Assembly: GCA_002269645.1 (NCBI GenBank)
Contig: NIVC01003287.1
Location: 1-64,000, forward strand
Origin: Macrostomum lignano
Taxonomy: Eukaryota
Direction of reading: 5' to 3'
DNA: 64,000 nucleotides
Position 1 is the first letter of the stretch. Every line of letters begins with the position of its first letter. The notes beneath the pieces were generated by a model. The model made no database searches and was not told the origin of the DNA. It saw only the letters and a list, made by a program, of their open reading frames with translations. Positions 1 to 59,936 of this stretch are shown in pieces. The position numbers and the translations under genes were made by a program.

Positions 1-288
1 GATCTCAACCCACAGGCCAACAGCCACAATACCGCCACCATCATCAAATCCGTCTGGCAATGGCGTGGCATCGATGCAGGCCACTTCGTTTGGCAGCTCG
101 CGCTCGGCTAGCACAGTCAAAGTGCCTTCGCCAATCGCTAGGCAGGTGAGCTGTCGGCCAATAGCTATTAGCAGGTGACGCTGTCCGGCTCCGCAAACGG
201 ACACTGTCCGACCAGATGGTGGCAGCCATTCAGCTAATCGACGCTTGCCAGTGGAATCCAATAGGCGAGCGGACTGCGGGCGCGTGAC
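1..288 (-). CDS. DDB1: DDB1 exon 6 (runs off the window's left edge)
   Basis: Acceptor ctcAG at 289-290. Reads VTRPQSARLL...ELPNEVACIDATP...VAVGLWVEI, matching DDB1 'ITSASVRLV...EHEVACLDITP...AIGLWTDI'. Phase 0 with exon 5. Not shown in the ORF track in this frame. Confidence 0.93.
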
Positions 289-1325
289 CTGAGATTTTAA
301 AGAAATTTTAATTTTGGTTAATATTATTCATTATGCGCTACTAATAAAAGATTTAATAAGTAGTGTAGTGTGGAAATAAACTGCAAAAAATATTTGAAAA
401 TTCTATACTTGCTACTTAAACAAAGGTAAGTAGTACAGTAAAGGACAGAGATAAAATTTGCGAAGTTCTATTTTGTGTATGAGGACTAGTACAAGAGCCC
501 CTTAAGGGGAATGTACTTGATCTCGTACTATATAGTTTGTAAGTGGCTATTAACTGCAAGCAAAAAATTTTATGAAAATAAAAAAATCAAGTAGACAAAA
601 GCAATCTGTTTGATTCTGTACACTCTTTGTACGAATTCGTGTGTGAGTTGAAAGCTCAGTGAAATGGCCATAACGGCTCCCCGTTGGAAAGTTATGCACC
701 TGCAGAGGCATAAAAGGTGAACGAGGTGCACAAAAGAGGCACTTTGGTGGTCTATTTCGTGTGTGTTTTGGAAATGCACCTGAGTGCACCTTTTATGCCT
801 AAATGTCACCAATATTTTTGAAAAGAGGCATGAAAGGTGTAAAATAGGTGAAGTGGTCAGGCAGTAGGTGAATTCTCAATTTTGATTTGTTGCGGCGGTA
901 GGGGCAGTAAAGGTGTATAAGGGGCACTGGAGGTGCGCAAAAGGTGAAGAGTAGGCTCACAAGTGAGGCACATCAGGTGCACCAGAGGTGCTGAAGGGGC
1001 GTTTGGATGACGCAGAATGTAGAAATGACACAATCGAATATATCTCTAAGTAACTAAAAATGACGCGCAAAAAATTACCGTTTCAAAAAAAGGATATATT
1101 CTAAATATACCCCATATAAAAAATGACGAAACTTAAAACAATAAAACAACACAAGATTTTTCCCTATCCCAACAAAAATAAAGCTAAAATCAGATACACT
1201 ACTTCAAGGAGAAAAACAAAGACACATATTAGACTTCAAGAGACAAAACTACAATCCTTCGAAAAACTATTTGAAGTTATAGTTATTCAAATAACTATGT
1301 AAATAACAATATTGCAACCTGCGTT

Positions 1326-4300
1326 ATATTCAGCCCCTTGAGTGTCATTTCTAAGCTCTCCATTTAATTCTATATATTGACAGCGACAGGGCTAGTTAGA
1401 GATGCTGAGAGTAGCGGGCTCTGCGTCATCTTTGCACCTGTGTATATCAGCCCATTGAGTTCATTTCTAAGCTCTCCATTTAATTCTATATATTGACAGC
1501 GACAGGGCTAGTTAGAGATGCTGAGAGTAGCGGGCTCTGCGTCATCTTTGCACTGTGTATATCAGCCCATTGAGTGTCATTTCTAAGCTCTCCATTTAAT
1601 TCTATATATTGACAGCGACAGGGCTAGTTAGAGATGCTGAGAGTAGCGGGCTCTGCGTCATCTTTGCACCTGTGTATATCAGCCCCATTGAGTGTCATTT
1701 CTAAGCTCTCCATTTAATTCTATATATTGACAGCGACAGGGCTAGTTAGAGATGCTGAGAGTAGCGGGCTCTGCGTCATCTTTGCACCTGTGTATATCAG
1801 CCCCATTGAGTGTCATTTCTAAGCTCTCCATTTAATTCTATATATTGACAGCGACAGGGCTAGTTAGAGATGCTGAGAGTAGCGGGCTCTGCGTCATCTT
1901 TGCACCTGTGTATATCAGCCCATTGAGTGTCATTTCTAAGCTCTCCATTTAATTCTATATATTGACAGCGACAGGGCTAGTTAGAGATGCTGAGAGTAGC
2001 GGGCTCTGCGTCATCTTTGCACCTGTGTATATCAGCCCCATTGAGTGTCATTTCTAAGCTCTCCATTTAATTCTATATATTGACAGCGACAGGGCTAGTT
2101 AGAGATGCTGAGAGTAGCGGGCTCTGCGTCATCTTTGCACCTGTGTATATCAGCCCCATTGAGTGTCATTTCTAAGCTCTCCATTTAATTCTATATATTG
2201 ACAGCGACAGGGCTAGTTAGAGATGCTGAGAGTAGCGGGCTCTGCGTCATCTTTGCACCTGTGTATATCAGCCCCATTGAGTGTCATTTCTAAGCTCTCC
2301 ATTTAATTCTATATATTGACAGCGACAGGGCTAGTTAGAGATGCTGAGAGTAGCGGGCTCTGCGTCATCTTTGCACCTGTGTATATCAGCCCATTGAGTG
2401 TCATTTCTAAGCTCTCCATTTAATTCTATATATTGACAGCGACAGGGCTAGTTAGAGATGCTGAGAGTAGCGGGCTCTGCGTCATCTTTGCACCTGTGTA
2501 TATCAGCCCATTGAGTGTCATTTCTAAGCTCTCCATTTAATTCTATATATTGACAGCGACAGGGCTAGTTAGAGATGCTGAGAGTAGCGGGCTCTGCGTC
2601 ATCTTTGCACCTGTGTATATCAGCCCCATTGAGTGTCATTTCTAAGCTCTCCATTTAATTCTATATATTGACAGCGACAGGGCTAGTTAGAGATGCTGAG
2701 AGTAGCGGGCTCTGCGTCATCTTTGCACCTGTGTATATCAGCCCCATTGAGTGTCATTTCTAAGCTCTCCATTTAATTCTATATATTGACAGCGACAGGG
2801 CTAGTTAGAGATGCTGAGAGTAGCGGGCTCTGCGTCATCTTTGCACCTGTGTATATCAGCCCATTGAGTGTCATTTCTAAGCTCTCCATTTAATTCTATA
2901 TATTGACAGCGACAGGGCTAGTTAGAGATGCTGAGAGTAGCGGGCTCTGCGTCATCTTTGCACCTGTGTATATCAGCCCCATTGAGTGTCATTTCTAAGC
3001 TCTCCATTTAATTCTATATATTGACAGCGACAGGGCTAGTTAGAGATGCTGAGAGTAGCGGGCTCTGCGTCATCTTTGCACCTGTGTATATCAGCCCATT
3101 GAGTGTCATTTCTAAGCTCTCCATTTAATTCTATATATTGACAGCGACAGGGCTAGTTAGAGATGCTGAGAGTAGCGGGCTCTGCGTCATCTTTGCACCT
3201 GTGTATATCAGCCCCATTGAGTGTCATTTCTAAGCTCTCCATTTAATTCTATATATTGACAGCGACAGGGCTAGTTAGAGATGCTGAGAGTAGCGGGCTC
3301 TGCGTCATCTTTGCACCTGTGTATATCAGCCCCATTGAGTGTCATTTCTAAGCTCTCCATTTAATTCTATATATTGACAGCGACAGGGCTAGTTAGAGAT
3401 GCTGAGAGTAGCGGGCTCTGCGTCATCTTTGCACCTGTGTATATCAGCCCCATTGAGTGTCATTTCTAAGCTCTCCATTTAATTCTATATATTGACAGCG
3501 ACAGGGCTAGTTAGAGATGCTGAGAGTAGCGGGCTCTGCGTCATCTTTGCACCTGTGTATATCAGCCCCATTGAGTGTCATTTCTAAGCTCTCCATTTAA
3601 TTCTATATATTGACAGCGACAGGGCTAGTTAGAGATGCTGAGAGTAGCGGGCTCTGCGTCATCTTTGCACCTGTGTATATCAGCCCCATTGAGTGTCATT
3701 TCTAAGCTCTCCATTTAATTCTATATATTGACAGCGACAGGGCTAGTTAGAGATGCTGAGAGTAGCGGGCTCTGCGTCATCTTTGCACCTGTGTATATCA
3801 GCCCCATTGAGTGTCATTTCTAAGCTCTCCATTTAATTCTATATATTGACAGCGACAGGGCTAGTTAGAGATGCTGAGAGTAGCGGGCTCTGCGTCATCT
3901 TTGCACCTGTGTATATCAGCCCCATTGAGTGTCATTTCTAAGCTCTCCATTTAATTCTATATATTGACAGCGACAGGGCTAGTTAGAGATGCTGAGAGTA
4001 GCGGGCTCTGCGTCATCTTTGCACCTGTGTATATCAGCCCCATTGAGTGTCATTTCTAAGCTCTCCATTTAATTCTATATATTGACAGCGACAGGGCTAG
4101 TTAGAGATGCTGAGAGTAGCGGGCTCTGCGTCATCTTTGCACCTGTGTATATCAGCCCCATTGAGTGTCATTTCTAAGCTCTCCATTTAATTCTATATAT
4201 TGACAGCGACAGGGCTAGTTAGAGATGCTGAGAGTAGCGGGCTCTGCGTCATCTTTGCACCTGTGTATATCAGCCCCATTGAGTGTCATTTCTAAGCTCT

Positions 4301-7300
4301 CCATTTAATTCTATATATTGACAGCGACAGGGCTAGTTAGAGATGCTGAGAGTAGCGGGCTCTGCGTCATCTTTGCACCTGTGTATATCAGCCCCATTGA
4401 GTGTCATTTCTAAGCTCTCCATTTAATTCTATATATTGACAGCGACAGGGCTAGTTAGAGATGCTGAGAGTAGCGGGCTCTGCGTCATCTTTGCACCTGT
4501 GTATATCAGCCCCATTGAGTGTCATTTCTAAGCTCTCCATTTAATTCTATATATTGACAGCGACAGGGCTAGTTAGAGATGCTGAGAGTAGCGGGCTCTG
4601 CGTCATCTTTGCACCTGTGTATATCAGCCCCATTGAGTGTCATTTCTAAGCTCTCCATTTAATTCTATATATTGACAGCGACAGGGCTAGTTAGAGATGC
4701 TGAGAGTAGCGGGCTCTGCGTCATCTTTGCACCTGTGTATATCAGCCCCATTGAGTGTCATTTCTAAGCTCTCCATTTAATTCTATATATTGACAGCGAC
4801 AGGGCTAGTTAGAGATGCTGAGAGTAGCGGGCTCTGCGTCATCTTTGCACCTGTGTATATCAGCCCCATTGAGTGTCATTTCTAAGCTCTCCATTTAATT
4901 CTATATATTGACAGCGACAGGGCTAGTTAGAGATGCTGAGAGTAGCGGGCTCTGCGTCATCTTTGCACCTGTGTATATCAGCCCCATTGAGTGTCATTTC
5001 TAAGCTCTCCATTTAATTCTATATATTGACAGCGACAGGGCTAGTTAGAGATGCTGAGAGTAGCGGGCTCTGCGTCATCTTTGCACCTGTGTATATCAGC
5101 CCCATTGAGTGTCATTTCTAAGCTCTCCATTTAATTCTATATATTGACAGCGACAGGGCTAGTTAGAGATGCTGAGAGTAGCGGGCTCTGCGTCATCTTT
5201 GCACCTGTGTATATCAGCCCCATTGAGTGTCATTTCTAAGCTCTCCATTTAATTCTATATATTGACAGCGACAGGGCTAGTTAGAGATGCTGAGAGTAGC
5301 GGGCTCTGCGTCATCTTTGCACCTGTGTATATCAGCCCCATTGAGTGTCATTTCTAAGCTCTCCATTTAATTCTATATATTGACAGCGACAGGGCTAGTT
5401 AGAGATGCTGAGAGTAGCGGGCTCTGCGTCATCTTTGCACCTGTGTATATCAGCCCCATTGAGTGTCATTTCTAAGCTCTCCATTTAATTCTATATATTG
5501 ACAGCGACAGGGCTAGTTAGAGATGCTGAGAGTAGCGGGCTCTGCGTCATCTTTGCACCTGTGTATATCAGCCCCATTGAGTGTCATTTCTAAGCTCTCC
5601 ATTTAATTCTATATATTGACAGCGACAGGGCTAGTTAGAGATGCTGAGAGTAGCGGGCTCTGCGTCATCTTTGCACCTGTGTATATCAGCCCCATTGAGT
5701 GTCATTTCTAAGCTCTCCATTTAATTCTATATATTGACAGCGACAGGGCTAGTTAGAGATGCTGAGAGTAGCGGGCTCTGCGTCATCTTTGCACCTGTGT
5801 ATATCAGCCCCATTGAGTGTCATTTCTAAGCTCTCCATTTAATTCTATATATTGACAGCGACAGGGCTAGTTAGAGATGCTGAGAGTAGCGGGCTCTGCG
5901 TCATCTTTGCACCTGTGTATATCAGCCCCATTGAGTGTCATTTCTAAGCTCTCCATTTAATTCTATATATTGACAGCGACAGGGCTAGTTAGAGATGCTG
6001 AGAGTAGCGGGCTCTGCGTCATCTTTGCACCTGTGTATATCAGCCCCATTGAGTGTCATTTCTAAGCTCTCCATTTAATTCTATATATTGACAGCGACAG
6101 GGCTAGTTAGAGATGCTGAGAGTAGCGGGCTCTGCGTCATCTTTGCACCTGTGTATATCAGCCCCATTGAGTGTCATTTCTAAGCTCTCCATTTAATTCT
6201 ATATATTGACAGCGACAGGGCTAGTTAGAGATGCTGAGAGTAGCGGGCTCTGCGTCATCTTTGCACCTGTGTATATCAGCCCCATTGAGTGTCATTTCTA
6301 AGCTCTCCATTTAATTCTATATATTGACAGCGACAGGGCTAGTTAGAGATGCTGAGAGTAGCGGGCTCTGCGTCATCTTTGCACCTGTGTATATCAGCCC
6401 CATTGAGTGTCATTTCTAAGCTCTCCATTTAATTCTATATATTGACAGCGACAGGGCTAGTTAGAGATGCTGAGAGTAGCGGGCTCTGCGTCATCTTTGC
6501 ACCTGTGTATATCAGCCCCATTGAGTGTCATTTCTAAGCTCTCCATTTAATTCTATATATTGACAGCGACAGGGCTAGTTAGAGATGCTGAGAGTAGCGG
6601 GCTCTGCGTCATCTTTGCACCTGTGTATATCAGCCCCATTGAGTGTCATTTCTAAGCTCTCCATTTAATTCTATATATTGACAGCGACAGGGCTAGTTAG
6701 AGATGCTGAGAGTAGCGGGCTCTGCGTCATCTTTGCACCTGTGTATATCAGCCCCATTGAGTGTCATTTCTAAGCTCTCCATTTAATTCTATATATTGAC
6801 AGCGACAGGGCTAGTTAGAGATGCTGAGAGTAGCGGGCTCTGCGTCATCTTTGCACCTGTGTATATCAGCCCCATTGAGTGTCATTTCTAAGCTCTCCAT
6901 TTAATTCTATATATTGACAGCGACAGGGCTAGTTAGAGATGCTGAGAGTAGCGGGCTCTGCGTCATCTTTGCACCTGTGTATATCAGCCCCATTGAGTGT
7001 CATTTCTAAGCTCTCCATTTAATTCTATATATTGACAGCGACAGGGCTAGTTAGAGATGCTGAGAGTAGCGGGCTCTGCGTCATCTTTGCACCTGTGTAT
7101 ATCAGCCCCATTGAGTGTCATTTCTAAGCTCTCCATTTAATTCTATATATTGACAGCGACAGGGCTAGTTAGAGATGCTGAGAGTAGCGGGCTCTGCGTC
7201 ATCTTTGCACCTGTGTATATCAGCCCCATTGAGTGTCATTTCTAAGCTCTCCATTTAATTCTATATATTGACAGCGACAGGGCTAGTTAGAGATGCTGAG

Positions 7301-10108
7301 AGTAGCGGGCTCTGCGTCATCTTTGCACCTGTGTATATCAGCCCCATTGAGTGTCATTTCTAAGCTCTCCATTTAATTCTATATATTGACAGCGACAGGG
7401 CTAGTTAGAGATGCTGAGAGTAGCGGGCTCTGCGTCATCTTTGCACCTGTGTATATCAGCCCCATTGAGTGTCATTTCTAAGCTCTCCATTTAATTCTAT
7501 ATATTGACAGCGACAGGGCTAGTTAGAGATGCTGAGAGTAGCGGGCTCTGCGTCATCTTTGCACCTGTGTATATCAGCCCCATTGAGTGTCATTTCTAAG
7601 CTCTCCATTTAATTCTATATATTGACAGCGACAGGGCTAGTTAGAGATGCTGAGAGTAGCGGGCTCTGCGTCATCTTTGCACCTGTGTATATCAGCCCCA
7701 TTGAGTGTCATTTCTAAGCTCTCCATTTAATTCTATATATTGACAGCGACAGGGCTAGTTAGAGATGCTGAGAGTAGCGGGCTCTGCGTCATCTTTGCAC
7801 CTGTGTATATCAGCCCCATTGAGTGTCATTTCTAAGCTCTCCATTTAATTCTATATATTGACAGCGACAGGGCTAGTTAGAGATGCTGAGAGTAGCGGGC
7901 TCTGCGTCATCTTTGCACCTGTGTATATCAGCCCCATTGAGTGTCATTTCTAAGCTCTCCATTTAATTCTATATATTGACAGCGACAGGGCTAGTTAGAG
8001 ATGCTGAGAGTAGCGGGCTCTGCGTCATCTTTGCACCTGTGTATATCAGCCCCATTGAGTGTCATTTCTAAGCTCTCCATTTAATTCTATATATTGACAG
8101 CGACAGGGCTAGTTAGAGATGCTGAGAGTAGCGGGCTCTGCGTCATCTTTGCACCTGTGTATATCAGCCCCATTGAGTGTCATTTCTAAGCTCTCCATTT
8201 AATTCTATATATTGACAGCGACAGGGCTAGTTAGAGATGCTGAGAGTAGCGGGCTCTGCGTCATCTTTGCACCTGTGTATATCAGCCCCATTGAGTGTCA
8301 TTTCTAAGCTCTCCATTTAATTCTATATATTGACAGCGACAGGGCTAGTTAGAGATGCTGAGAGTAGCGGGCTCTGCGTCATCTTTGCACCTGTGTATAT
8401 CAGCCCCATTGAGTGTCATTTCTAAGCTCTCCATTTAATTCTATATATTGACAGCGACAGGGCTAGTTAGAGATGCTGAGAGTAGCGGGCTCTGCGTCAT
8501 CTTTGCACCTGTGTATATCAGCCCCATTGAGTGTCATTTCTAAGCTCTCCATTTAATTCTATATATTGACAGCGACAGGGCTAGTTAGAGATGCTGAGAG
8601 TAGCGGGCTCTGCGTCATCTTTGCACCTGTGTATATCAGCCCCATTGAGTGTCATTTCTAAGCTCTCCATTTAATTCTATATATTGACAGCGACAGGGCT
8701 AGTTAGAGATGCTGAGAGTAGCGGGCTCTGCGTCATCTTTGCACCTGTGTATATCAGCCCCATTGAGTGTCATTTCTAAGCTCTCCATTTAATTCTATAT
8801 ATTGACAGCGACAGGGCTAGTTAGAGATGCTGAGAGTAGCGGGCTCTGCGTCATCTTTGCACCTGTGTATATCAGCCCCATTGAGTGTCATTTCTAAGCT
8901 CTCCATTTAATTCTATATATTGACAGCGACAGGGCTAGTTAGAGATGCTGAGAGTAGCGGGCTCTGCGTCATCTTTGCACCTGTGTATATCAGCCCCATT
9001 GAGTGTCATTTCTAAGCTCTCCATTTAATTCTATATATTGACAGCGACAGGGCTAGTTAGAGATGCTGAGAGTAGCGGGCTCTGCGTCATCTTTGCACCT
9101 GTGTATATCAGCCCCATTGAGTGTCATTTCTAAGCTCTCCATTTAATTCTATATATTGACAGCGACAGGGCTAGTTAGAGATGCTGAGAGTAGCGGGCTC
9201 TGCGTCATCTTTGCACCTGTGTATATCAGCCCCATTGAGTGTCATTTCTAAGCTCTCCATTTAATTCTATATATTGACAGCGACAGGGCTAGTTAGAGAT
9301 GCTGAGAGTAGCGGGCTCTGCGTCATCTTTGCACCTGTGTATATCAGCCCCATTGAGTGTCATTTCTAAGCTCTCCATTTAATTCTATATATTGACAGCG
9401 ACAGGGCTAGTTAGAGATGCTGAGAGTAGCGGGCTCTGCGTCATCTTTGCACCTGTGTATATCAGCCCCATTGAGTGTCATTTCTAAGCTCTCCATTTAA
9501 TTCTATATATTGACAGCGACAGGGCTAGTTAGAGATGCTGAGAGTAGCGGGCTCTGCGTCATCTTTGCACCTGTGTATATCAGCCCCATTGAGTGTCATT
9601 TCTAAGCTCTCCATTTAATTCTATATATTGACAGCGACAGGGCTAGTTAGAGATGCTGAGAGTAGCGGGCTCTGCGTCATCTTTGCACCTGTGTATATCA
9701 GCCCCATTGAGTGTCATTTCTAAGCTCTCCATTTAATTCTATATATTGACAGCGACAGGGCTAGTTAGAGATGCTGAGAGTAGCGGGCTCTGCGTCATCT
9801 TTGCACCTGTGTATATCAGCCCCATTGAGTGTCATTTCTAAGCTCTCCATTTAATTCTATATATTGACAGCGACAGGGCTAGTTAGAGATGCTGAGAGTA
9901 GCGGGCTCTGCGTCATCTTTGCACCTGTGTATATCAGCCCCATTGAGTGTCATTTCTAAGCTCTCCATTTAATTCTATATATTGACAGCGACAGGGCTAG
10001 TTAGAGATGCTGAGAGTAGCGGGCTCTGCGTCATCTTTGCACCTGTGTATATCAGCCCCATTGAGTGTCATTTCTAAGCTCTCCATTTAATTCTATATAT
10101 TGACAGCG
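1326..10108. repeat. 118-bp tandem satellite, about 74 copies
   Basis: Period 118 read from line offsets. Unit gtgtatatcagccccattgagtgtcatttctaagctctccatttaattctatatattgacagcgacagggctagttagagatgctgagagtagcgggctctgcgtcatctttgcacct. The 1-nt-shorter variants occur only before about position 3100. Confidence 0.99.
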
Positions 10109-11255
10109 CCGCTATAGTTTAAATCCATGTTTGAATTTACTGCGCTCGTACATTTTAACTTATACTTGATATTGACAGGTTAGCTCAGAAATATTTCGCC
10201 AGCTTCTTTAGTAATGGCTTTTTATCAAAATACAATTGGGCTTTGCTTTTACTTTTGGTTTGGTCACCTGCTGTGAGCGTTCCACTTTTTATCTATATAT
10301 TGTTTTGTATTATGCACAGCGGTTTGTTTGGAGGTGTGTTTCGCGCTTTTCTCGATCTTTCCACTGTAGCTGGATTTTGAGTAAAGATAAGAATCGCAGT
10401 TCTCACGATTGCTTAAAAGCAAATACGTGCTCTGGGTATGCTCAAGATTGCGCAATGCTCGGTGACAGTGATGGGTGGTTCATGGTGGAAGACACCTATC
10501 TAAGCAAATTTGTTGCACCAAACTTATGATTGCGCCATTATCGTAAAGAATAGTGTCAAGCAGTTCCAAATATGTAAAATTGTAAACTTTATTTAGTCAC
10601 CAAAGAGAAATTTTATCTACTCTTTGATTTGTTGATGACTGACTTCATCCTAATTTTTGAGCATATACGTCTTTTTCTTGCATATTTAATCTATTTCTCG
10701 AATTTCTATTTTGCATCATTCATTTAATTCCTATCCAATTCATTGTGTGTCATTTATTTGTTATCCACTGCCCACTGTATATTGACAGCAGCGGATCTCA
10801 CAGAGCTACTCAATGAATTGAAAATGCAGAAATAACTGAGTATTCGAAACCCAAACTGGATTAGGGTCGATCAGTGAGTCTGGCTGTGAGGCTGTGAATG
10901 AGGCAGTGAATGAGGCTGTGAATGAGGCTGTGAATGTGAGTGGGGCATATTGTACCTAATGTATGTTTCATGCTGGTTAATGCGCATGTTTCATTTTGAA
11001 TCAAAGTAATTTGGTGTCAAAATGAGTCACTACTGAAATGAAGCAGTCCACCCCTTTGAGTCTAAAAGCATAGTGGATTTGACACGTACTATGAACGTGA
11101 AATATTTTGACCACCCCATTCCGAACCAATGAAAATTAGAGTGAACTTGTTGATGTCAAACTGCCGCTTCATATAAAATGGGACTTCAGTTGGCCTTTCA
11201 AAAAGCCAGATTTCTATTTGTCAATTAATTTCATTTTTTCAATAAATTAACCCAA

Positions 11256-12811
11256 ATGTCCAAACAATTGGAGTTCATAAAACAGCTGATAAGCCGCAAA
11301 GGCAAATGCTATGACGTCGCTAAGCGGCAAAAGTCGTTTGAGAAAGAGCTCGCCGCGTCTGATCGATTCCAGTTAATGGTAAGTGAAGGTGAAGAGCAAT
11401 ATTTTTACCAATAACTGCCCTGTCTCTACCATTCTACCCTGTCTCTACCATTCTACCCTGTCTCTACCATTCTGCCCTGTCTCTACCATTCTACCCTGTC
11501 TCTACCATTCTGCCCTGTCTCTACCATTCTGCCCTTTCTCTACCATTCTGCCCTGTCTCTACCATTCTACCCTTTCTCTACCATTCTGCCCTGTCTCTAC
11601 CATTCTGCCCTGTCTCTACCATTCTACCCTTTCTCTACCATTCTGCCCTGTCTCTACCATTCTACCCTGTCTCTACCATTCTGCCCTGTCTCTACCATTC
11701 TACCCTGTCTCTACCATTCTGCCCTGTCTCTACCATTCTACCCTGTCTCTACCATTCTGCCCTGTCTCTACCATTCTGCCCTTTCTCTACCATTCTGCCC
11801 TGTCTCTACCATTCTGCCCTGTCTCTACCATTCTGCCCTGTCTCTACCATTCTGCCCTGTCTCTACCATTCTGCCCTGTCTCTACCATACTGCCCTGTCT
11901 CTACCATTCTGCCCTTTCTCTACCATTCTGCCCTGTCTCTACCATTCTGCCCTGTCTCTACCATTCTGCCCTGTCTCTACCATTCTGCCCTGTCTCTACC
12001 ATTCTGCCCTGTCTCTACCATTCTGCCCTGTCTCTACCATTCTGCCCTGTCTCTACCATACTGCCCTGTCTCTACCATTCTGCCCTTTCTCTACCATTCT
12101 GCCCTGTCTCTACCATTCTGCCCTGTCTCTACCATTCTGCCCTGTCTCTACCATTCTGCCCTGTCTCTACCATTCTGCCCTGTCTCTACCATTCTGCCCT
12201 GTCTCTACCATACTGCCCTGTTTCTACCATACTGCCCTGTCTCTACCATTCTGCCCTGTCTCTACCATTCTGCCCTTTCTCTACCATTCTGCCCTGTCTC
12301 TACCATTCTGCCCTGTCTCTACCATTCTGCCCTGTCTCTACCATTCTGCCCTGTCTCTACCATTCTGCCCTTTCTCTACCAATAACTGCCCTGTCTCTAC
12401 CATTCTGCCCTGTCTCTACCAATAACTGCCCTGTCTCTACCATTCTGCCCTGTCTCTACCATTCTGCCCTGTCTCTACCATTCTGCCCTGTCTCTACCAT
12501 TCTGCCCTGTCTCTACCATTCTGCCCTTTCTCTACCAATAACTGCCCTGTCTCTACCATTCTGCCCTGTCTCTACCAATAACTGCCCTGTCTCTACCAAT
12601 AACTGCCCTGTCTCTACCATTCTGCCCTGTCTCTACCAATAACTGCAATTTCTCTACTCAGACCGATGCGTCACAGCCCGGATCAGCTGAGCAGCCGCCC
12701 ACCGCAGCCCAGCAGCCGCCCGGCCCAGCTGAGCGGCCCAAGTCGCATGCCGGCAGGAGTACATTTGCCCATTCGGTGACTGCCTACCAATGCACTATTT
12801 CAACATGCTAA
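11256..12811 (+). CDS. Putative two-exon 90-aa protein of unknown function (exons 11256-11378 and 12662-12811), nested antisense in the DDB1 intron
   Basis: ATG, 41 codons, GTAAGT donor at 11379; acceptor tttctctactcAG ending at 12661; both phase 0; second exon GC-rich, 49 codons then TAA. No recognisable homology. Confidence 0.55.
11407..12646. repeat. 19-bp minisatellite (accattctgccctgtctct), about 65 copies, forming the intron of the nested ORF
   Basis: Direct period-19 repeat. The 419-aa ORF 11383-12642 is an artefact of it. Confidence 0.97.
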
Positions 12812-13886
12812 TATAACTATTTTCTAACATGTGAAACATGTAAAGATAATATAATATTTGAAAACTTATTAATTATAACTAAAATTCGTATGCACATAAA
12901 ATATAATTATAAAATTTGCAAGTAAATAATATATATAACTAAAATAGCTGGACTTGTGTCTAATGCGATTTATTTGAAACCCTTTGGAGCTGCGATCGAA
13001 TTATTTTCGCATTTCTACTATTAGTAGCATGTAATGCAAAATTTATAGTTTTTTGCGAAACTTTTATGTGTCATATTTCGAAATATTCTGGTCGGATATA
13101 TTTTTTTGGAGTGTCATATCTGTGATGTGGCCTGTCGGGTATCCCCTACGATGTGCGTCATTTCTTTGTTTTGGGTCATCACTGATAACATAGGGGCGCA
13201 GAAAGCGCGTGAAAGGTGAATTAGAGGTGCATAAGGTGTACATATGCGGCGTAAATATGTATACAGGTGCATTTCCAAAACACGCTCGAAATTATAGACC
13301 CCTAAAGTGCCTCTTCTGTGCACCTCGCTCACCTTTCATGCCTATGCACGAATATTAACGCATTAAGAATTCGTAACAAAAAATTAACTGAGAGTTACAT
13401 ATATGCTAATCGCTGTTATCCCCTTCCTAATCCTGACAAACCACGAAAAAACATTTCCAAAACTGATCACCTTTCGTGCCTCCAGTGCACACTGTACACC
13501 TTTTCTGCACCTCCACCGCAGCACACCTTTTTTTCACCTTTCACTCCTCCAATGCCCCCAATTCCTATTTTATTCACCTTTTGTGCCTCAACGCACACTG
13601 TGCACCTTTTATGCACCTAACTCACCTATGACACCTGTGCCCCTACCGCCTATTTCGTGCCTTAAATTCACCTTCCGCCCCTGCAGAGGCACTCAGGTGA
13701 ACAAAAGGTGCACAAGTGGCATAAAAAAGGCATAGGAGAGGCGAAAGTGAGGCAGAAGGTGCAAAACTCTTCACCTTTCATGCCTACTTTAAAAACTCAA
13801 AATCCAACGGGCTCGCCTCTTAATCTGAGGCGGTGCCCTAAACGCCCCCTCCCCCAGCAACTAAGAAGATTAATGATTCTCATTAC

Positions 13887-14408
13887 CTGAACAATCTGTC
13901 CGCCAAGAACATTCTGGCACAGGTAGGTGCGCTCGGCAGTTTCAAATGCGGGCATTGGCACCTCTTCAATCTCCATAGCCGGATCGCAGGGCGAACAGCT
14001 CATTAATAGAGTCTTGGTCTGATTCTGGAAGGTGATAATGATGAAGTTATCGAAGCTGCTGCCAGCTGTTCGCAGATTCCAGACGCCTTTGATGCCGGCC
14101 AGATCGATGTTAACCATCTCGTTGATGCCGACTCCGCTGCGAATGATTCTCAGACTGCCGTCTTTGAATGCGCCCGAACAGGTGACTAGCTGTCCCTGGC
14201 CCAGGTTGTCAATGTCAACAACTGCCATGTCAACCACTGGAGCAATATTGACAAAGCTTTCCAATACGCTGACAAAATTGCCCGAACTATCGGCCTCTAC
14301 TAGTAGGCGAATCAATTGACTATCGCCGAAACGGGAGCCAATGAAAACAACATTGTTGTCAAGGTAACTGATTGTCTCCGGTATAGAAATTTCGCCAAGT
14401 AGTTCAAC
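13887..14408 (-). CDS. DDB1: DDB1 exon 5
   Basis: [32 protein letters not shown]...[26 protein letters not shown]...GQIVQ. 522 nt, phase 0/0, AG and GT present. Confidence 0.96.
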
Positions 14409-14614
14409 CTGGAAATGTTTTTACATTGAAGTTGATTGTAGTAATTAGATGCCGAGACAATTATTTCATAGTTGCTCCCGCCGTTTACCCAGCACAAGCT
14501 AAGTTAAAACGTTTTGAGCTTTGTGCCAGCAGAAATAGACTTGATCCTGCTAGTTAGAACGAGTTCTAACAAAACAATAAACGGAGCTCAAATGTTATTT
14601 TAACACCAACAGAC

Positions 14615-14854
14615 CTTCATATCTTTGACTCGGTCGCCTTCCCTCTCCAGGAACAGCATGAACAGCCGGCCGGCCATGTCGCCCAATAGGAATCGATTGC
14701 AATCCAATCGATCAAAGGCCAGCATTGGCGAAGTTCGAATCACTGGCGGAGCGATGGTTTTTAATGAGCCGTCCTTTGAACGGATTGTCACGGTCTCTTG
14801 GCCTACTATTAGTAGGCCCGGATGCGGCATTGGCAGCGGAATTAGCATGGATGC
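14615..14854 (-). CDS. DDB1: DDB1 exon 4
   Basis: ASMLIPLPMPHPGLLIVGQE...RFLLGDMAGRLFMLFLE...KDMK. 240 nt, phase 0/0. Confidence 0.95.
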
Positions 14855-15084
14855 CTGTCAATGGAAATGAGTAATTTAACAATTAGTTGAGTTTCTTAGA
14901 AGCACAAGAGCCAATAATCGGGTAAGTCGGACCAGTTTCTTAGAAAGCGATTTCATAGAATGGCGAGGTGATTGGTTTCTTACAAATATTGGATAAATGA
15001 TTTCTTAGAATGATTACGTATTTTATTTCTTAAAATTGCTTGAATAATATTTTTTTAAATGGCTGGGAATTTTTATTTGAATTG

Positions 15085-15757
15085 CTAGGTAAGTAATGCC
15101 TTAGAATTGCTGGGTAAGTGGTTTCTTGGAATCGCTGGGTAAATGATTTCTTGGAATCACTGGGTAAGTGGTTTCTTGGAATCGCTGGGTAAATGATTTC
15201 TTGGAATCGCTGGGTAAGTGGTTTCTTGGAATCGCTGGGTAAATGATTTCTTGGAATCACTGGGTAAGTGGTTTCTTGGAATCGCTGGGTAAGTGGTTTC
15301 TTGGAATCGCTGGGTAAGTGGTTTCTTGGAATCGCTGGGTAAGTGATTTCTTGGAATCGCTGGGTAAGTGGTTTCTTGGAATCGCTGGGTAAGTGATTTC
15401 TTGGAATCGCTGGGTAAGTGGTTTCTTGGAATCGCTGGGTAAGTGATTTCTTGGAATCACTGGGTAAGTGATTTCTTGGAATCGCTGGGTAAATGATTTC
15501 TTGGAATCACTGGGTAAGTGGTTTCTTGGAATCGCTGGGTAAGTGGTTTCTTGGAATCGCTGGGTAAGTGGTTTCTTGGAATCGCTGGGTAAGTGGTTTC
15601 TTGGAATCGCTGGGTAAATGATTTCTTGGAATCACTGGGTAAGTGGTTTCTTGGAATCGCTGGGTAAGTGATTTCTTGGAATCGCTGGGTAAGTGATTTC
15701 TTGGAATCACTGGGTAAGTGATTTCTTGGAATCGCTGGGTAAGTGGTTTCTTAGAAT
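15085..15757. repeat. 25-bp minisatellite (tgggtaagtggtttcttggaatcgc) in DDB1 intron 3
   Basis: Period 25, about 27 copies with diverging edges. Confidence 0.95.
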
Positions 15758-15847
15758 AAGAACAGCTTTATAAAAGCGATTTCTCGAATGAACATTAGAA
15801 ATCGGTGTGGCTAATTAATATATAATAAAATATGCAAGTTATTGTAC

Positions 15848-16372
15848 CTGCGCTTGAATAGAGTCAATTTTCCAAGGCCCCGGCGCCAGATCTCTGGTGT
15901 CGCAATTGATTTCCACAGTTTTCAGATGACGCCCAACAGAATCCTGAGTTATATAGGCAATCGTAGGATTCACTCCGTCGATGAAAGTCATATCGACCAA
16001 GTCGATCTCTTCGATTCGAACATTGAAAGCTTTCAACGTGTCCGGTCCGGCCTCCGGATTGTAGGGCTTCTGAACAAAGGACACTGGAATAACCTTCAGT
16101 AGGCCTTCGTATAGTTGCAGAGCCACTACACGACCGCGAGGATCCACAATGCCCAGCGGACCGTTCTCAGATTGTCTACCAATTCGTTCGTGCAGATTGC
16201 CAGAGGCCAGGGTCACCACCTTCAGGCAGTGGCTGTTGTCAGCTAAATCATCACCAGCAGCCTCAGTAGCTTCCATCATTGACAAGCCAGTGTTGTCTAC
16301 CTGGCATTCCAATATCATGGCGTCCTTCTTTTGTGTCAGCAGGAAAATCAAATCGGTGCCAGATGTTCGACC
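15848..16372 (-). CDS. DDB1: DDB1 exon 3
   Basis: GRTSGTDLIFLLT...ERIGRQSENGPLGIVDP...LYEGLLKVIP...KAFNVRIEE...GRHLKTVE...GPWK. 525 nt, phase 0/0. Confidence 0.96.
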
Positions 16373-16569
16373 CTGCGCGAAAGAAATAAAAAGTAATAAA
16401 GCTAGCTGTATGCTTTTTTGAGAAGAACTCTATAAAAATATAGGCAGGCTAGAATGTTTTTAGTAAATATAGGGCGGTTTTTTCAAAGAGGTGATAGATT
16501 TCTAGGAGTATTATTATTATTGCTAGGAAAATAATACTTAGACACGATGTGGCAACTTTTACAGTGCTA

Positions 16570-18150
16570 TTCGGCATCTAACAACAACAGTCAGGCGTGG
16601 GACAATGTCAACAGGGCGCGTTTCAGGGCCTTGGCGCCAGCGTAGGCAGCACAGCCGGCGTCAGCCAGCAGGCAGTCGACGAAACGCCGAGTGCGCGCCT
16701 GTCCCCGCCGGTAGAGTGCAGCGTGAGCAACGACTCGGCTAGAATGATATGGCCTGCCAGCTGGAGTCGCCGACGGCGCAACAGCTCGCTCAGTTCCCTG
16801 GGACGAGACAGGCCGGTGCGGCGATAAAGTGCAGCATTGGTGACTCGCTCGTATCCGAATCCGTCAGCGTCCTGCGCCCAGGTCTCGGCGTTGTACAACA
16901 GGACGGTCTCGACCACCGCATGGAACAACGCTGCCCTCTGGCGGTCAGGCAGGGCCTCGGACTGCAGGGCAGCCATCGCGGAACGGAAGAAAGCCCAGGC
17001 AAGTCCACCGTACCTTGCGAACATCAGGCAACAGACCGCCGAGGTAGACGAACTGCTGACGACGTGGAAGCCTCGTCACCTGCCCATCAGCGCCTCGACA
17101 GAAAATTGCAGTCTCGATGTCGTCCGGCACGCAGAGCACGACGGTCTTCTGCGTGTTGACTACCAGGCCAACACTCGCCCAGTCAAGCAACAGAACGAAC
17201 AGGAACGGCGCAAGCGCATCTCGAAGCACCCCGGACTCCGGAGGATGTCTTAAAGAAGTCCGATAGGCCGTCCAGTCTTGAAACAGCAGCTTTCGTATCA
17301 CGGTACATCGCCATGATGGCGAATATCAGCTGCTCTGGCACGTTGTACGCACAGATCACCTTTGGGAGCACAGACCTTACGGCCGAGTCGAATGCCTTCT
17401 TGATGTCTATGAAGATGACAATCAGGATCGATTGGGGTGTCCGCGCTTCCTCGATAACTTGCTGAATAGCCAGGATCTGCTGCGTTACTGTGCCGCGATG
17501 GGGCCGGAAGCCGTTCTGCTCAGGACGCAGGTACGGATCCAGTACGGGCTGCAACCGCGATAACAGCATCCGGATGAACAACTTCGCAGTGCAGGACTGA
17601 AGGCAGATACCTCGATGCTCCTCTAGCCGTGTGGTGTCCGGCTTTTTAGGAACTGCGACGATGTGCACCGTGGTCCATTCGTTGGGAGCACGCGATTCAT
17701 CACCCTGGCGACCTCACTGGCCACACAGTAGATGCGCGGCAGAGACGGCCCGAATGGCGTCATCAACAGCAGCCTGCAGTCGCTGCAGATAGACAGCCGC
17801 CAAGGCCTCCTCTGCCTCGCGGGTTGGTCTCCTGCTCAAGCGGAGTCTTTCCAGCTATTCCCTCGCTTGCCGAATCGCGGAGTCGTCTTGCCATACCGGC
17901 TGCCCCTACTAGGCTGGTCGTATCAGCGGGACTGCTTGTTCCACAGCAGCTCGAACAGCAGCACACAACTCCACGTACTCGGCACCTCCACGCTTGCCGC
18001 CGAGCGCAGTGATGAAAGTGCTGGTAAAGCGGCTGTTTGTGTCAACATCCAGATTGTGACTTGTGAGACAAAGGTCACAGATGAGGAGTCGATGATCGAA
18101 CTGCAGAGTCAGCGGCATGATGGCATTGTTACTGGCATCCTGGGTCTTAA
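16570..18150 (-). mobile_element. Degenerate RTE-clade non-LTR retrotransposon (endonuclease end plus RT) in DDB1 intron 2
   Basis: Frameshifted motifs DHRLL (APE end), HRGICL, QNGFRPHRGT, FIDIKKAFDS, LAPFLF, VETVLLYNAETW, RRRRLQLAGHI. Boundaries are approximate. Confidence 0.85.
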
Positions 18151-18434
18151 TTTGAGATGCCGAGTTGAAAAAGTTCAAAATCAAATAAAATACCTGCGCC
18201 TTTTAGATCCACAGAGGTCTGCAGACTCTATGCTTACAGGGTACTTAAATCTGACAGTTAATATAAGTCTTGAAATTCCAGTGATTATAAATTTATTGAT
18301 ACTTCAATCAAATTTGAATAACAAAAAAAACAAATGGCAGCCAGATTGAAAAATGGGTTACTAATTTGGCATCTGGAGATGATATGCCATGACATAAAAA
18401 CCCAGCTGATATTACTAGATAATAAAATAGATAC

Positions 18435-18583
18435 CTGAGGCTGAAATCCAAGCAGTACACTGATCTTGCCATATATAGAGATCTCCTTAATAGTCTTGAC
18501 GCCACTGGAGCTGACAACATGTAACTCGAGAGTGTTGTGCTTGGCAACTAGCAAATTTCTATGATTCTTGCCAGTGAAATGAC
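18435..18583 (-). CDS. DDB1: DDB1 exon 2
   Basis: (G)HFTGKNHRNLLVAKHNTLELHVV...IYGKISVLLGFQPQ. 149 nt, phase 1/0. Confidence 0.95.
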
Positions 18584-18919
18584 CTGTTGTTGAGTTGATG
18601 TTATGATTAATTATTATTAAGTATAAGTGATACACATAACTTATCAAAAGCAATATAAACTTGAAAAATATGATATCAAAACAAAAAATAGGCCTAACTG
18701 AAAAATGTTACTTTTACAAACTAGAAAATCAAATAATGCTTAAAAGCCCACTAAAATAAAATAAAACACTACCAAACTTTTGTAAGTTCAGAACTTGAAA
18801 AGCCTAATAAATCAATTTATAAGCAAATAAATAAAAGAAAAGTATAATGAATAAAATCTTATAATTTTTTTGTTTGGTATAACAGTCTTTTATAAATTTC
18901 CATGAACTAATCTTTAGAG

Positions 18920-19419
18920 CAGGGGTCGGCAAAATGCGGCCCGCGGGCCAGATCCGGCCCGCGTCATCTTCAAGTCCGGCCCGCAGCACTCTTACTATCT
19001 AACAATGTTAAAGTGGCCCGCGAACCAATTTTGTGTTGAAACATTCAACTTTTCAAGCAAAATTAGCTTTCACCTCGGCATTCCTATAACAATACTGTGT
19101 CAATTTCAATTGTGATGTTGTTGGTTGTATTTGGTCTATCATATAAAATTGGCGGCTATCCTTTAGTAGAATCATTTGTTAAATTAATTTTTGATTGAAT
19201 TCGATTTCTTTCTATTTTTAGAGTCCAAAAATATGAAACAAGTGAACAATCTAACAGTTTACAATTAAATGTACTGGCAGCTAAATTGTTTGTTATAGTC
19301 AATTGCCGCATCACGACACGAAGGTACTACTTTGTGTGCATTGTTGTGCATTTTTTTGGCCCGCCACCTCAGCCAGTCATCCAATCCGGCCCGCACTGAA
19401 AAAAGTTAGCCGACCCCTG
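18920..19419. mobile_element. hAT (Charlie/SPIN-OC1-like) MITE, 500 bp
   Basis: TIR CAGGGGTCGGC / GCCGACCCCTG; 8-bp TSD CTTTAGAG at 18912-18919 and 19420-19427; subterminal CGGCCCGC motifs. Confidence 0.92.
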
Positions 19420-19690
19420 CTTTAGAGATTCCTTTTTAAATCAATTATAGTATTATTCAAATATTTTTTGTTTGTTTTGACTATTAAATACTATATTTTA
19501 GCCAAGGTCTAAAATACACTAGACACCCCCTTTGAATACCTAATGGCACCAATATGCCAGATTGTGTCTATATAACTAGGAGTCAATCCCCACAAGACAC
19601 TGTCTACAATAATGGCCATTGGCTGCCATAAGGATTTAAAATACATTTTTCTTTTGTTTTTTACCTATATACATTTTTACAATTTTTGGT

Positions 19691-19988
19691 CATACATGCA
19701 CAACCTCCAAATTTCGGTCGGCCGTGCGACTTAGTTTTAACAAAAATGCGACGTAGTTTTTGGCCAAAAATGCAACTTACATGTAGAAACCCTAAAAGCA
19801 AAATTAACGCAACTTTGGGTAAACGGCAGGAGTAACTATGACTGTCTTATAAACCCAAAATGCCTCGTCAGCTACTTAGTACTACTACTCTGTGTTTTTT
19901 TTGGGTTGGCATTTTTTGCGACTTCCTTGGTTGGCCGCCAAATCGGTCGGCCGGATCGGCCGACTTGTCCGACTATTGTGCATGTATT
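19691..19988. mobile_element. hAT-type MITE, 298 bp
   Basis: TIR CATACATGCACAA / TTGTGCATGTATT (one terminal mismatch); 8-bp TSD TTTTTGGT on both sides. Confidence 0.7.
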
Positions 19989-20150
19989 TTTTTGGTATTT
20001 GATTAGATTGGTTTTGCAACAAACTTTTTATGGCCACTATCACCTAGCTAGGTTAGCTGAATATTTAGCATGTAAAGGTAAATAGCAAAATTAGTTTCAG
20101 TCTTTAAATAGGTTAGGCTTATAAATTATCATTCATTTATTGCTCTACAT

Positions 20151-20404
20151 CAGTGGCGGCACAGTACCTCCTATTGGGGGGAGGGGGTAGTAGTTGGGTG
20201 GTCACCCCTTCCCCTAGCAAATTTTCAGAATTAGAGTAGTGCATTACTCTAAAATCTCACAAAAGTGCATATAATAAGCTTATAATAAACAATTATGGTG
20301 GGTTACCCTATAAAGGGATAGGAGGGTAGTCATCCCCAAGGAGGTAAGAGGGGTTATCACCCAGGGGCAATAGCCCCCTCTGCTCTCCACCTGTGCTACC
20401 ACTG
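20151..20404. mobile_element. hAT-type MITE, 254 bp
   Basis: TIR CAGTGGCGGCACAG / CTGTGCTACCACTG; 8-bp TSD CTCTACAT. Confidence 0.88.
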
Positions 20405-21546: not shown

Positions 21547-21607
21547 CTGTAAGAGAGCAGCTTACTGCAGTAGATCGTTGGGCTGTTACAATATAATTTT
21601 TCGACAT
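21547..21607 (-). CDS. DDB1: DDB1 exon 1 (start codon)
   Basis: MSKNYIVTAQRSTAVSCSLT(G), matching DDB1 [21 protein letters not shown]. Phase-1 donor GTATGC joins exon 2 in frame. Confidence 0.95.
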
Positions 21608-27003: not shown

Positions 27004-27027
27004 GTAAATTTGTCCTTCTCTACCAGT

Positions 27028-58396: not shown

Positions 58397-59936
<1,540 letters not shown>

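What the first reader, a model, noticed from the sequence alone, without database searches (positions are those of the whole stretch)
11256..12811. Hidden two-exon 90-aa gene antisense to DDB1, inside the large element
Seen, and absent from the ORF track: ATG at 11256, consensus GTAAGT donor, pyrimidine-rich CAG acceptor, matching phase 0 and exon-like composition. The product is MSKQLEFIKQLISRKGKCYDVAKRQKSFEKELAASDRFQLM-TDASQPGSAEQPPTAAQQPPGPAERPKSHAGRSTFAHSVTAYQCTISTC. I recognise no family. The intron is filled by a minisatellite, like the real introns in this window. A possible upstream non-coding exon ends at a GTGAGT donor near 10874. It could be a transposon accessory gene, a captured host fragment or a de novo microprotein.
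Basis: partly seen in the sequence, partly recalled or inferred. Interest (0 to 1): 0.7.

Follow-up and report, generated by a model that had tools for sequence, protein, structure and literature searches.

The report
Already annotated repeat-borne orphan gene
The two-exon 90-codon gene is really there, but GenBank already lists it as a hypothetical protein of the flatworm Macrostomum lignano. It sits in a young, multi-copy repeat block inside a DDB1 intron, and nothing yet shows that its product has a function.

Summary
ATG 11256, GTAAGT donor at 11379, CAG acceptor ending at 12661 and stop at 12809-12811 give the 90-aa product quoted. That product is 100% identical over its full length to GenBank PAA52179.1/PAA67728.1, hypothetical proteins BOX15_Mlig001263g3 and Mlig018228g1. 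The window is the start of Macrostomum lignano contig NIVC01003287.1. That annotation was built from stranded RNA-seq with TransDecoder ORFs, so the splice has indirect transcript support. The sequence pattern alone is not above chance.

The gene lies antisense in a 13.6-kb DDB1 intron (289-13886). It sits inside a block (at least 2842-13195, probably from about 1001) that recurs at 99.2% identity on another contig with a different right flank. The block also carries the 8.8-kb 118-bp satellite.

An exhaustive protein search finds relatives only in M. lignano, and there are no Pfam or PDB matches. Seven older gene models share codons 1-79 and then diverge at an internal GT donor into domain-less tails. 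Six of 12 variants switch reading frame, but only through indels, the error type I expect of that older assembly.

Coding tests are ambiguous. Verdict: a real, already annotated orphan transcription unit carried by a repeat; low novelty.

The parts
11126..11177 (+). Putative core promoter: CCAAT at 11126-11130 and TATAAA at 11172-11177, 84 nt upstream of the ATG
   Evidence: One search gives the motif positions: 31 TATAAA and 65 CCAAT on the + strand of the whole window, so the joint placement is unlikely by chance, though noted post hoc. The only ATG between the TATA motif and 11256 overlaps the TATA box itself. A stands at -3 of the ATG. Inferred, not shown by 5'-end data.
11256..11378 (+). 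Coding exon 1: 41 codons forming a basic (pI 9.8) predicted helix
   Evidence: Identical to GenBank PAA52179.1/PAA67728.1. AlphaFold2 gives a helix at residues 3-42 with pLDDT about 70-77. The codon score is best in frame 0: 6.1 against -12.5 and -15.0.
11379..12661 (+). Intron of 1,283 nt, GTAAGT...CAG, phase 0
   Evidence: The intron of the second copy is 1,243 nt, so the array length differs.
11415..12638 (+). 19-bp minisatellite (63.9 copies, 94% matches) filling 95% of the intron
12662..12811 (+). Coding exon 2: 49 codons plus TAA, a P/Q/A-rich tail predicted to be disordered
   Evidence: pLDDT is below 50 for residues 46-73. Frames 0 and 1 score equally for codon usage: 25.3 against 28.9.
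12776..12781 (+). Internal phase-0 GT donor (GTGACT) after codon 79, the point where seven older gene models leave exon 2
   Evidence: P0006 and P0008-P0013 are identical or nearly identical to the product through residue 79 and then diverge.
1001..13195 (.). Repeated block that carries the gene. Its right end is exact. Its left end is approximate, because the second copy's contig starts inside the satellite. The part shown to be shared is 2842-13195.
   Evidence: Window 2842-13195 equals L002 1-10329 at 99.25%. Outside the arrays the two copies differ by one 21-bp indel and 2 substitutions in 1,306 nt, and by 0 in 550 nt. The flanks differ completely after 13195. The flanking motif-rich arms stop at about 1000 and resume at about 13201. 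There is a weak inverted similarity between 1006-1313 and 12900-13180, score 92 against 52.8 +/- 8.0 for shuffles.
1312..10108 (.). 118-bp satellite, 74.6 copies, 99% alike, part of the repeated block
289..13886 (-). Host intron of DDB1 (13.6 kb) that holds the block
   Evidence: The flanking exons match consecutive positions of the Pfam profile. The boundaries CAG|GTAATG and ...CTCAG|GTC were read.
13887..14315 (-). DDB1 exon upstream of the host intron
   Evidence: Pfam Beta-prop_RSE1_2nd, profile positions 1-85, E = 3e-16.
1..288 (-). DDB1 exon downstream of the host intron; it runs off the start of the contig
   Evidence: Pfam Beta-prop_RSE1_2nd, profile positions 86-176, E = 4e-15.
701..782 (+). 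Left arm of an outer inverted repeat. It is 87% alike to 13264-13348 and lies in AGGTG-rich sequence that brackets the block.
13264..13348 (-). Right arm of the outer inverted repeat. It lies outside the block shared with the second copy.

Best explanation
This is a real, transcribed and spliced two-exon transcription unit of Macrostomum lignano, already in GenBank as a hypothetical protein. It is carried by a young, multi-copy repeat block of about 12 kb, most of it satellite, that lies antisense in a DDB1 intron.

Inferred mechanism:
- Transcription starts about 30 nt downstream of the block's own TATAAA.
- The 1.28-kb minisatellite intron is removed at GTAAGT/CAG.
- The first AUG, with A at -3, opens a 90-codon frame. 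If translated, it gives a 9.9-kDa basic protein: one long N-terminal helix and a disordered P/Q/A-rich tail.

The frame is an orphan. It is known only from this species, belongs to no family and shows no sign of selection. I therefore read it as an ORF that rides on a repeat-borne mRNA, not as a conserved gene. In other copies exon 2 may also act as an internal exon, through a GT donor after codon 79.

Shown: the sequence anatomy, identity to the annotated CDS, the intronic antisense position, the second copy with a different flank, and the restriction to M. lignano in the libraries searched. Inferred: the promoter, translation, and the transposon-like nature of the block.
For: - The product is 100% identical over its full length to PAA52179.1/PAA67728.1 on two contigs of GCA_002269645.1. 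One of the two loci is this window, at exactly 11256-12811.
- That annotation derives from stranded RNA-seq (STAR, StringTie, TACO, TBONE) with TransDecoder ORFs. Weak antisense transcripts and repeat-overlapping transcripts were filtered out.
- The block recurs at 99.25% identity with an unrelated right flank.
- At least 12 further M. lignano protein models carry the same N-terminus, with at least 5 unrelated tails.
- The exhaustive phmmer search of 1.84 billion representatives finds no credible hit outside M. lignano.
- There is no Pfam or PDB match.
- CCAAT and TATAAA are well placed, and 11256 is the first ATG downstream of the TATA motif.
- The structure prediction is a helix followed by disorder.
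Against: - No read-level RNA data could be inspected. Multi-mapping reads were allowed (up to 1,000 loci), so expression of this particular copy is not shown.
- There is no canonical AATAAA or ATTAAA between the stop and the end of the block.
- Codon statistics are intermediate: 0.35 bits per codon, against 0.65 +/- 0.18 for coding and -0.32 +/- 0.28 for non-coding open stretches. A chance ORF is therefore not excluded.
- Terminal inverted repeats and a target-site duplication are weak or unverified, and the block holds no transposase ORF. 'Transposon-like' thus rests on dispersal alone.
- Sister species may be missing from the protein libraries, so 'species-restricted' may reflect sampling.
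Confidence: 0.5

Rival explanations
1. A functional small protein, either an accessory protein of the element or a host microprotein. The basic helix of exon 1 would bind a partner or nucleic acid, and the tail would be a disordered linker.
For: - 11256 is the first AUG downstream of a plausible TATA box, in a good context.
- The exon 1 peptide is unchanged in 11 of the 12 other variants: P0013 changes frame inside it and P0007 replaces only its first six residues.
- Exon 1 scores best in frame 0.
- The helix is predicted with moderate confidence.
- The model survived the annotators' filters.
Against: - No homolog is found outside the species, and there is no family or fold match.
- The copies are so young that identity says nothing about selection: there are 0 substitutions in the CDS between the two copies available as DNA.
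- Exon 2 scores as well in frame 1 as in frame 0.
- Half of the ML2 variants change frame.
Confidence: 0.17
2. A captured 5' fragment of a host gene. The block picked up a promoter, exon 1, intron 1, exon 2 and the start of intron 2. The last 11 codons and the stop would be read-through into the former intron.
For: - A phase-0 GT donor lies right after codon 79, and seven older gene models leave the exon there.
- The sequence after it is AT-rich (29% GC), like an intron.
- The fragment has a complete promoter-like region.
Against: - No parent gene was found.
- All seven tails lack any Pfam domain. They have the A/R/L/S-rich, K/N-poor make-up of spurious ORFs, and one is LINE-derived.
- The RNA-based GenBank annotation holds only the 90-aa form.
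Confidence: 0.13
3. A non-coding, repeat-derived RNA. The 90-codon frame would be a chance ORF that TransDecoder promoted to a CDS.
For: - The sequence pattern is not above chance.
- Codon statistics are intermediate, and exon 2 does not favour one frame.
- The tail is low-complexity and disordered.
- The variants show frame switches.
- There are no homologs.
Against: - The frame starts at the first AUG of the inferred mRNA and crosses the splice in phase. A scanning ribosome would translate it whatever its function.
- Exon 1 clearly prefers frame 0.
Confidence: 0.15
4. Not a mobile element. The block would be a plain segmental duplication or assembly redundancy of this hidden-polyploid genome, and the gene an ordinary nested intronic gene.
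For: - The Mlig_3_7 assembly holds 180-312 Mb of duplicated sequence at 95% identity or more.
- Only two copies could be seen as DNA.
- No transposase and no clean terminal repeats were found.
Against: - The right flanks are unrelated from one exact base onward.
- At least 5 further unrelated downstream contexts appear in ML2 models.
- The block is bracketed by the two arms of another inverted repeat, as expected for an insertion.
Confidence: 0.1

Closest known systems
Taxonomically restricted (orphan) genes annotated from transcriptomes as 'hypothetical protein'
   Same: It is short and found in one species only. It has no domain and a helix-plus-disorder prediction, and it was called by an ORF finder on an assembled transcript.
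   Different: This one is multi-copy and rides inside a 12-kb satellite-bearing repeat block, rather than being a single-copy locus.
Gene-fragment capture by DNA elements (Pack-MULEs, Helitrons); recalled from general knowledge, not tested against reference sequences
   Same: A promoter and 5' exons lie inside a dispersed repeat, and a splice donor is able to join downstream sequence.
   Different: No parent gene was found. The ends do not fit a Helitron (no 5'-TC, no 3'-CTRR), and no MULE-type long terminal repeats were seen.
Nested genes lying antisense in an intron of a host gene
   Same: The unit lies wholly within intron 289-13886 of DDB1, on the opposite strand, with its own promoter-like motifs.
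   Different: The nesting results from insertion or duplication of a repeat block. The second copy is not in DDB1.
Satellite-carrying foldback or non-autonomous DNA elements (for example the Drosophila Tetris/foldback type); recalled from general knowledge
   Same: A long internal tandem array sits between short unique ends, and the block is bracketed by inverted motif-rich arms.
   Different: The inverted arms are not part of the block shared with the second copy. Those elements are not known for carrying a spliced gene of this kind.

Membership tests
Functional protein-coding gene | A spliced, stable transcript | tested here: met
   Indirect. The CDS equals a GenBank model derived from stranded RNA-seq assembly. 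No reads were seen here, and multi-mapping means the family, not this copy, is what is supported.
Functional protein-coding gene | Homologs in other species | tested here: not met
   The exhaustive phmmer search gave only M. lignano models. The one foreign hit scores about 32 bits per repeat unit, inflated by summing five near-identical repeats. Sister species may be unsampled.
Functional protein-coding gene | Reading frame kept among paralogs | tested here: inconclusive
   Six of 12 ML2 variants are identical through codon 79. The other six switch frame between one and at least four times. All differences are indels, and ML2 is documented as less base-accurate.
Functional protein-coding gene | Purifying selection (dN/dS below 1) | not testable with these tools
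   The two DNA copies have no substitution in the CDS. DNA of the other copies is not on record.
Functional protein-coding gene | Frame-specific codon usage | tested here: inconclusive
   Exon 1 favours frame 0 and exon 2 does not. The overall score of 0.35 bits per codon lies between the coding and non-coding ranges.
Functional protein-coding gene | Evidence of translation | not testable with these tools
   No ribosome profiling or proteomic data are available here.
Non-autonomous class II (TIR) DNA transposon | Near-identical copies in unrelated flanks | tested here: met
   Two copies are seen as DNA. At least five more contexts are implied by protein models.
Non-autonomous class II (TIR) DNA transposon | Terminal inverted repeats | tested here: inconclusive
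   There is only a weak, gapped inverted similarity between 1006-1313 and 12900-13180, about 4.9 SD above shuffles. The outermost 15 nt do not pair.
Non-autonomous class II (TIR) DNA transposon | Target-site duplication | tested here: inconclusive
   GGGGCG may occur at both edges (996-1001 and 13193-13198). However, the left end is not independently defined.
Autonomous DNA transposon | A transposase or recombinase gene inside the element | tested here: not met
   No ORF of 90 aa or more lies outside the tandem arrays in 1001-13195, except 10236-10529, which has no Pfam match.
Helitron | 5'-TC and 3'-CTRR ends with a subterminal hairpin | tested here: not met
   The defined end reads ...ACATAGGG (CCCTATGT... 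on the other strand).
piggyBac | TTAA target at the ends | tested here: not met
   The flanks after the end are GCGC... in the window and AGAA... in L002.
Crypton | A tyrosine recombinase gene within the element | tested here: inconclusive
   There is none in the window copy. A 373-aa ORF with weak Phage_integrase (E = 0.0018) and QRICH1 hits lies 0.7 kb beyond the shared block in L002.
De novo gene | Orthologous non-coding sequence in an outgroup | not testable with these tools
   No genomes of other Macrostomum species are reachable here.
Transduplicated host-gene fragment | An identifiable parent gene | tested here: not met
   No model with these exons has a recognisable downstream domain.

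The most novel reading that the evidence does not exclude
The block is a previously undescribed satellite-carrying mobile element of Macrostomum. On this reading its own small spliced gene encodes a basic helical microprotein used by the element. Its promoter and two exons also act as a portable 5' module that splices into downstream sequence through the donor after codon 79, creating chimeric transcripts wherever the element lands.
Probability: 0.1. Interest if true: 0.5.

Novelty: already known. Interest (0 to 1): 0.2.

Why it matters
Biologically the result is modest. It explains one 'hypothetical protein' of the M. lignano annotation as the ORF of a repeat-borne transcript. It also flags a family of about a dozen UniProt entries whose names (Caprin-1_dimer, MamL-1, Peroxin-14, kinase, integrase and others) are mutually inconsistent and not reproduced by Pfam. 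If the frame proved to be translated and conserved in sister species, it would be a small example of an element-borne microprotein in a regeneration model. It would also be a case of a satellite array travelling with a transcription unit.

Tried and rejected
- Pfam on the product and on eight longer variants gave nothing. The best hit was DUF6919 at E = 0.15.
- The PDB sequence search gave nothing.
- Fold search was not run, because the model is a single helix plus disorder (mean pLDDT 57).
- The ankyrin-repeat protein P0014 (E = 2.6e-5) was rejected. Each repeat scores about 32 bits, and the total is a sum over near-identical repeats.
- Rfam and tRNA scans of 1-20000 gave nothing.
- There are no paralogs of the exons elsewhere in the window.
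- Helitron and piggyBac ends were rejected from the sequence of the defined end.
- DNA for a diverged variant (P0004) is not on record.
- Gene identifiers Mlig001263 and Mlig018228 were not found in the full text of the library, nor in the supplements of four M. lignano papers.
- The ML2 genome paper is not held, so how the ML2 models were made is unknown to me.
- A control search with a DDB1 exon returned nothing, although the M. lignano model exists. The word-indexed search therefore misses things, and I rely on the exhaustive search.
- dN/dS was abandoned, because there are no substitutions between the two copies.
- The frame-conservation test was kept but downgraded, because all differences are indels in a less accurate assembly.

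Full report
**1. Observation**

- The ATG is at 11256, and exon 1 (11256-11378) translates to the 41 residues quoted.
- GTAAGT starts at 11379, and the acceptor ...TTTCTCTACTCAG ends at 12661.
- Exon 2 (12662-12811) gives the 49 residues quoted plus TAA, in phase 0.
- A 19-bp minisatellite (11415-12638, 63.9 copies) fills 95% of the 1,283-nt intron.
- A true DDB1 intron nearby also holds a minisatellite (15072-15757).
- The exons are 46% and 64% GC, against 39% and 29% in the flanks.
- GTGAGT is at 10874.

As a bare pattern this is not above chance. With the same rules (ATG, perfect GTAAGT donor, YAG acceptor with at least 60% pyrimidines, at least 90 codons) the window offers 3 starting ATGs. 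Shuffles that keep the first-order (dinucleotide) statistics offer 6.35 on average, range 0-16.

**2. Identity of the window and of the gene**

The 90-aa product is 100% identical over its full length to GenBank PAA52179.1 and PAA67728.1. These are 'hypothetical protein BOX15_Mlig001263g3' and 'BOX15_Mlig018228g1' of the flatworm Macrostomum lignano.

One of the two encoding loci is this window. Contig NIVC01003287.1 of GCA_002269645.1 carries the gene at 11256-12811, and the window starts at base 1 of that contig. The gene is therefore hidden only from a plain ORF list.

The GenBank annotation of this assembly was made from stranded RNA-seq.
- Reads were mapped with STAR, allowing up to 1,000 multi-mappings, and assembled with StringTie and TACO.
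- Gene boundaries came from spliced-leader and poly(A) reads (TBONE), and ORFs from TransDecoder.

That is indirect but real support for the transcript and its splice. Because the copies are nearly identical, it supports the family rather than this particular copy.

**3. Position**

DDB1 runs on the minus strand.
- The exon at 13887-14315 matches positions 1-85 of Pfam Beta-prop_RSE1_2nd.
- The exon at 1-288 matches positions 86-176 of the same profile.
- The 13.6-kb stretch 289-13886 is therefore one DDB1 intron, bounded by CAG|GTAATG and ...CTCAG|GTC.
- The small gene lies inside it on the opposite strand.

**4. The large element**

Window 2842-13195 aligns to bases 1-10329 of a second contig (NIVC01001458.1, locus L002) at 99.25% identity.
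- Outside the tandem arrays the two copies differ by one 21-bp indel and two substitutions in 1,306 nt upstream of the intron array.
- They do not differ at all in the 550 nt that include exon 2.
- The similarity stops at one exact base (window 13195, ...ACATAGGG). After it the window continues into the DDB1 intron.
- L002 instead continues into a palindromic MITE-like stretch, a 373-aa ORF and genes with zf-C2H2_jaz and DHHC domains. None of these has any match in the window.

So the gene, its promoter region and the 8.8-kb 118-bp satellite (1312-10108, 74.6 copies at 99%) form one repeated block.

The left end cannot be fixed, because L002 begins inside the satellite. Two observations place it near 1001.
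- AGGTG/CACCT-rich arms stop at about 1000 and resume at about 13201. They contain an 87% inverted repeat, 701-782 against 13264-13348.
- A weak inverted similarity links 1006-1313 with 12900-13180, score 92 against 52.8 +/- 8.0 for shuffles.

GGGGCG occurs at both edges and could be a target-site duplication, but this is unverified.

The block contains no transposase-like ORF. Its defined end fits neither a Helitron nor piggyBac.

I read it as a non-autonomous, transposon-like repeat inserted into an older palindromic repeat in the intron. A plain segmental duplication remains possible.

**5. The family**

The exhaustive phmmer search of 1.84 billion representatives returned eight hits. The seven looked up by accession are M. 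lignano models from UniProt, the older ML2 assembly. The eighth is an ankyrin-repeat protein of unchecked source. Its score is about 32 bits per repeat, summed over five near-identical repeats, which I do not accept as homology.

With the word-indexed search the family has 13 distinct protein models.
- P0006 and P0008-P0013 (127-1,631 aa) match the product through residue 79; only P0013 departs from it, with a frame-shifted stretch in exon 1. All seven then diverge into at least five unrelated tails.
- The point of divergence is a phase-0 GT (GTGACT at 12776) inside exon 2.
- None of the tails has a Pfam domain.
- Their composition is that of spurious ORFs in GC-rich DNA, and one is LINE-derived.

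These long models therefore do not show fusion to real host genes. They do show that the two exons occur in several more genomic contexts, and that exon 2 offers a usable donor.

The UniProt names of these entries contradict each other and are not reproduced by Pfam.

**6. Coding or not**

- Six of the 12 other variants are identical through codon 79.
- The other six change frame between one and at least four times, in exon 2 or, in one case, exon 1.
- Every difference is an indel, and none is a simple substitution.
- ML2 is documented as less base-accurate, with fewer intact ORFs than Mlig_3_7.
- Models with closed frames would not have been listed at all.

The test is therefore inconclusive.

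Other tests do not settle it either.
- dN/dS cannot be computed, because the two accurate DNA copies have no substitution in the CDS.
- I trained a codon-usage score on 2,754 codons of other ORFs in the window. Exon 1 scores 6.1, -12.5 and -15.0 bits in frames 0, 1 and 2. Exon 2 scores 25.3, 28.9 and 12.8.
- The whole frame scores 0.35 bits per codon, between coding chunks (0.65 +/- 0.18, minimum 0.36) and non-coding open stretches (-0.32 +/- 0.28, maximum 0.24).
- AlphaFold2 without an alignment predicts one helix (residues 3-42, pLDDT about 70-77), a disordered stretch (46-73) and a weak short helix.
- The product would be 9.9 kDa with pI 9.4.
- There is no Pfam or PDB relative.

**7. How it most likely works**

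TATAAA at 11172 and CCAAT at 11126 lie 84 and 130 nt upstream of the ATG. The only other ATG in between overlaps the TATA box, and A stands at -3 of the start codon.

I infer the following sequence of events.
- Transcription starts near 11200.
- The minisatellite intron is removed.
- Ribosomes scanning from the cap meet the first AUG at 11256 and translate it.

No canonical poly(A) signal lies between the stop and the end of the block, so the 3' end is open.

Given the youth of the copies, the lack of any relative and the frame-neutral exon 2, I commit to this reading: an orphan ORF on a repeat-borne mRNA (confidence 0.5).

The rivals are:
- a functional microprotein (0.17);
- a chance ORF on a non-coding RNA (0.15);
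- a captured 5' fragment of a host gene (0.13);
- a plain segmental duplication rather than a mobile element (0.10).

**8. Comparison and verdict**

The closest known things are orphan genes called from transcriptomes, gene fragments carried by DNA elements, nested antisense intronic genes and satellite-carrying foldback-type elements. Membership in a transposon superfamily could not be shown.

The feature is real but already annotated, and its kind is ordinary for this repeat-rich, hidden-polyploid genome. Interest is low (0.2).

Noticed in passing
window 1312-10108: A 118-bp satellite, 74.6 copies at 99% identity, belongs to the same repeated block as the small gene and is shared with the second contig. 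A weak partial monomer lies apart from the array at 10741-10789.
   Followed up: partly
window 701-1000 and 13201-13800: AGGTG/CACCT-rich arms in inverted orientation (core 701-782 against 13264-13348, 87%) bracket the block and are absent from the second copy. They look like an older palindromic repeat split by the insertion. GGGGCG occurs at both edges.
   Followed up: partly
window 16623-17668 (minus strand): A remnant of a non-LTR retrotransposon reverse transcriptase (Pfam RVT_1, E = 4e-11) lies in the next DDB1 intron. Its reading frame is spread over three frames, so it has at least two frameshifts, and it is truncated.
   Followed up: partly
L002 11063-12184: A 373-aa ORF with weak Phage_integrase (E = 0.0018) and QRICH1 hits, possibly a Crypton-like tyrosine recombinase. 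It lies 0.7 kb beyond the end of the shared block, after a palindromic MITE-like stretch (L002 10330-10700).
   Followed up: partly
window 13914-21772 (minus strand): The GenBank DDB1 model on this contig has only 545 residues and ends at 13914, short of the exon end at 13887. The exon at 1-288 is not part of it, so the 13.6-kb repeat-filled intron seems to have broken the transcript-based model.
   Followed up: no
window 31748-33187 (+), 33776-34480 (+), 44133-45848 (-): Three ORFs look related by eye in the ORF list, judging from similar N-terminal and coiled-coil-like stretches. One lies in inverted orientation, suggesting a local gene-family expansion.
   Followed up: no
window 26630-27007 and 28014-28340 (+): ORFs with cysteine/histidine spacing of the PHD-finger type, probably exons of one gene. 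They are separated by (TAGA)n and CT-rich arrays.
   Followed up: no
window 58410-59934: A 1.5-kb (AGAC)n microsatellite. More generally, the tandem-repeat scan returns 53 rows (overlapping rows describe the same array), many of them between ORFs that look like exons.
   Followed up: no
UniProt entries behind P0001-P0013: Near-identical short proteins carry unrelated automatic names (Caprin-1_dimer, MamL-1, Peroxin-14, DM, protein kinase, integrase, TPR, PI3K/PI4K, NPH3). None of these names is reproduced by Pfam.
   Followed up: yes
tool behaviour: The word-indexed protein search returned nothing for a DDB1 exon, although a M. lignano DDB1 model is on record. Negative results from that tool are therefore weak.
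   Followed up: no
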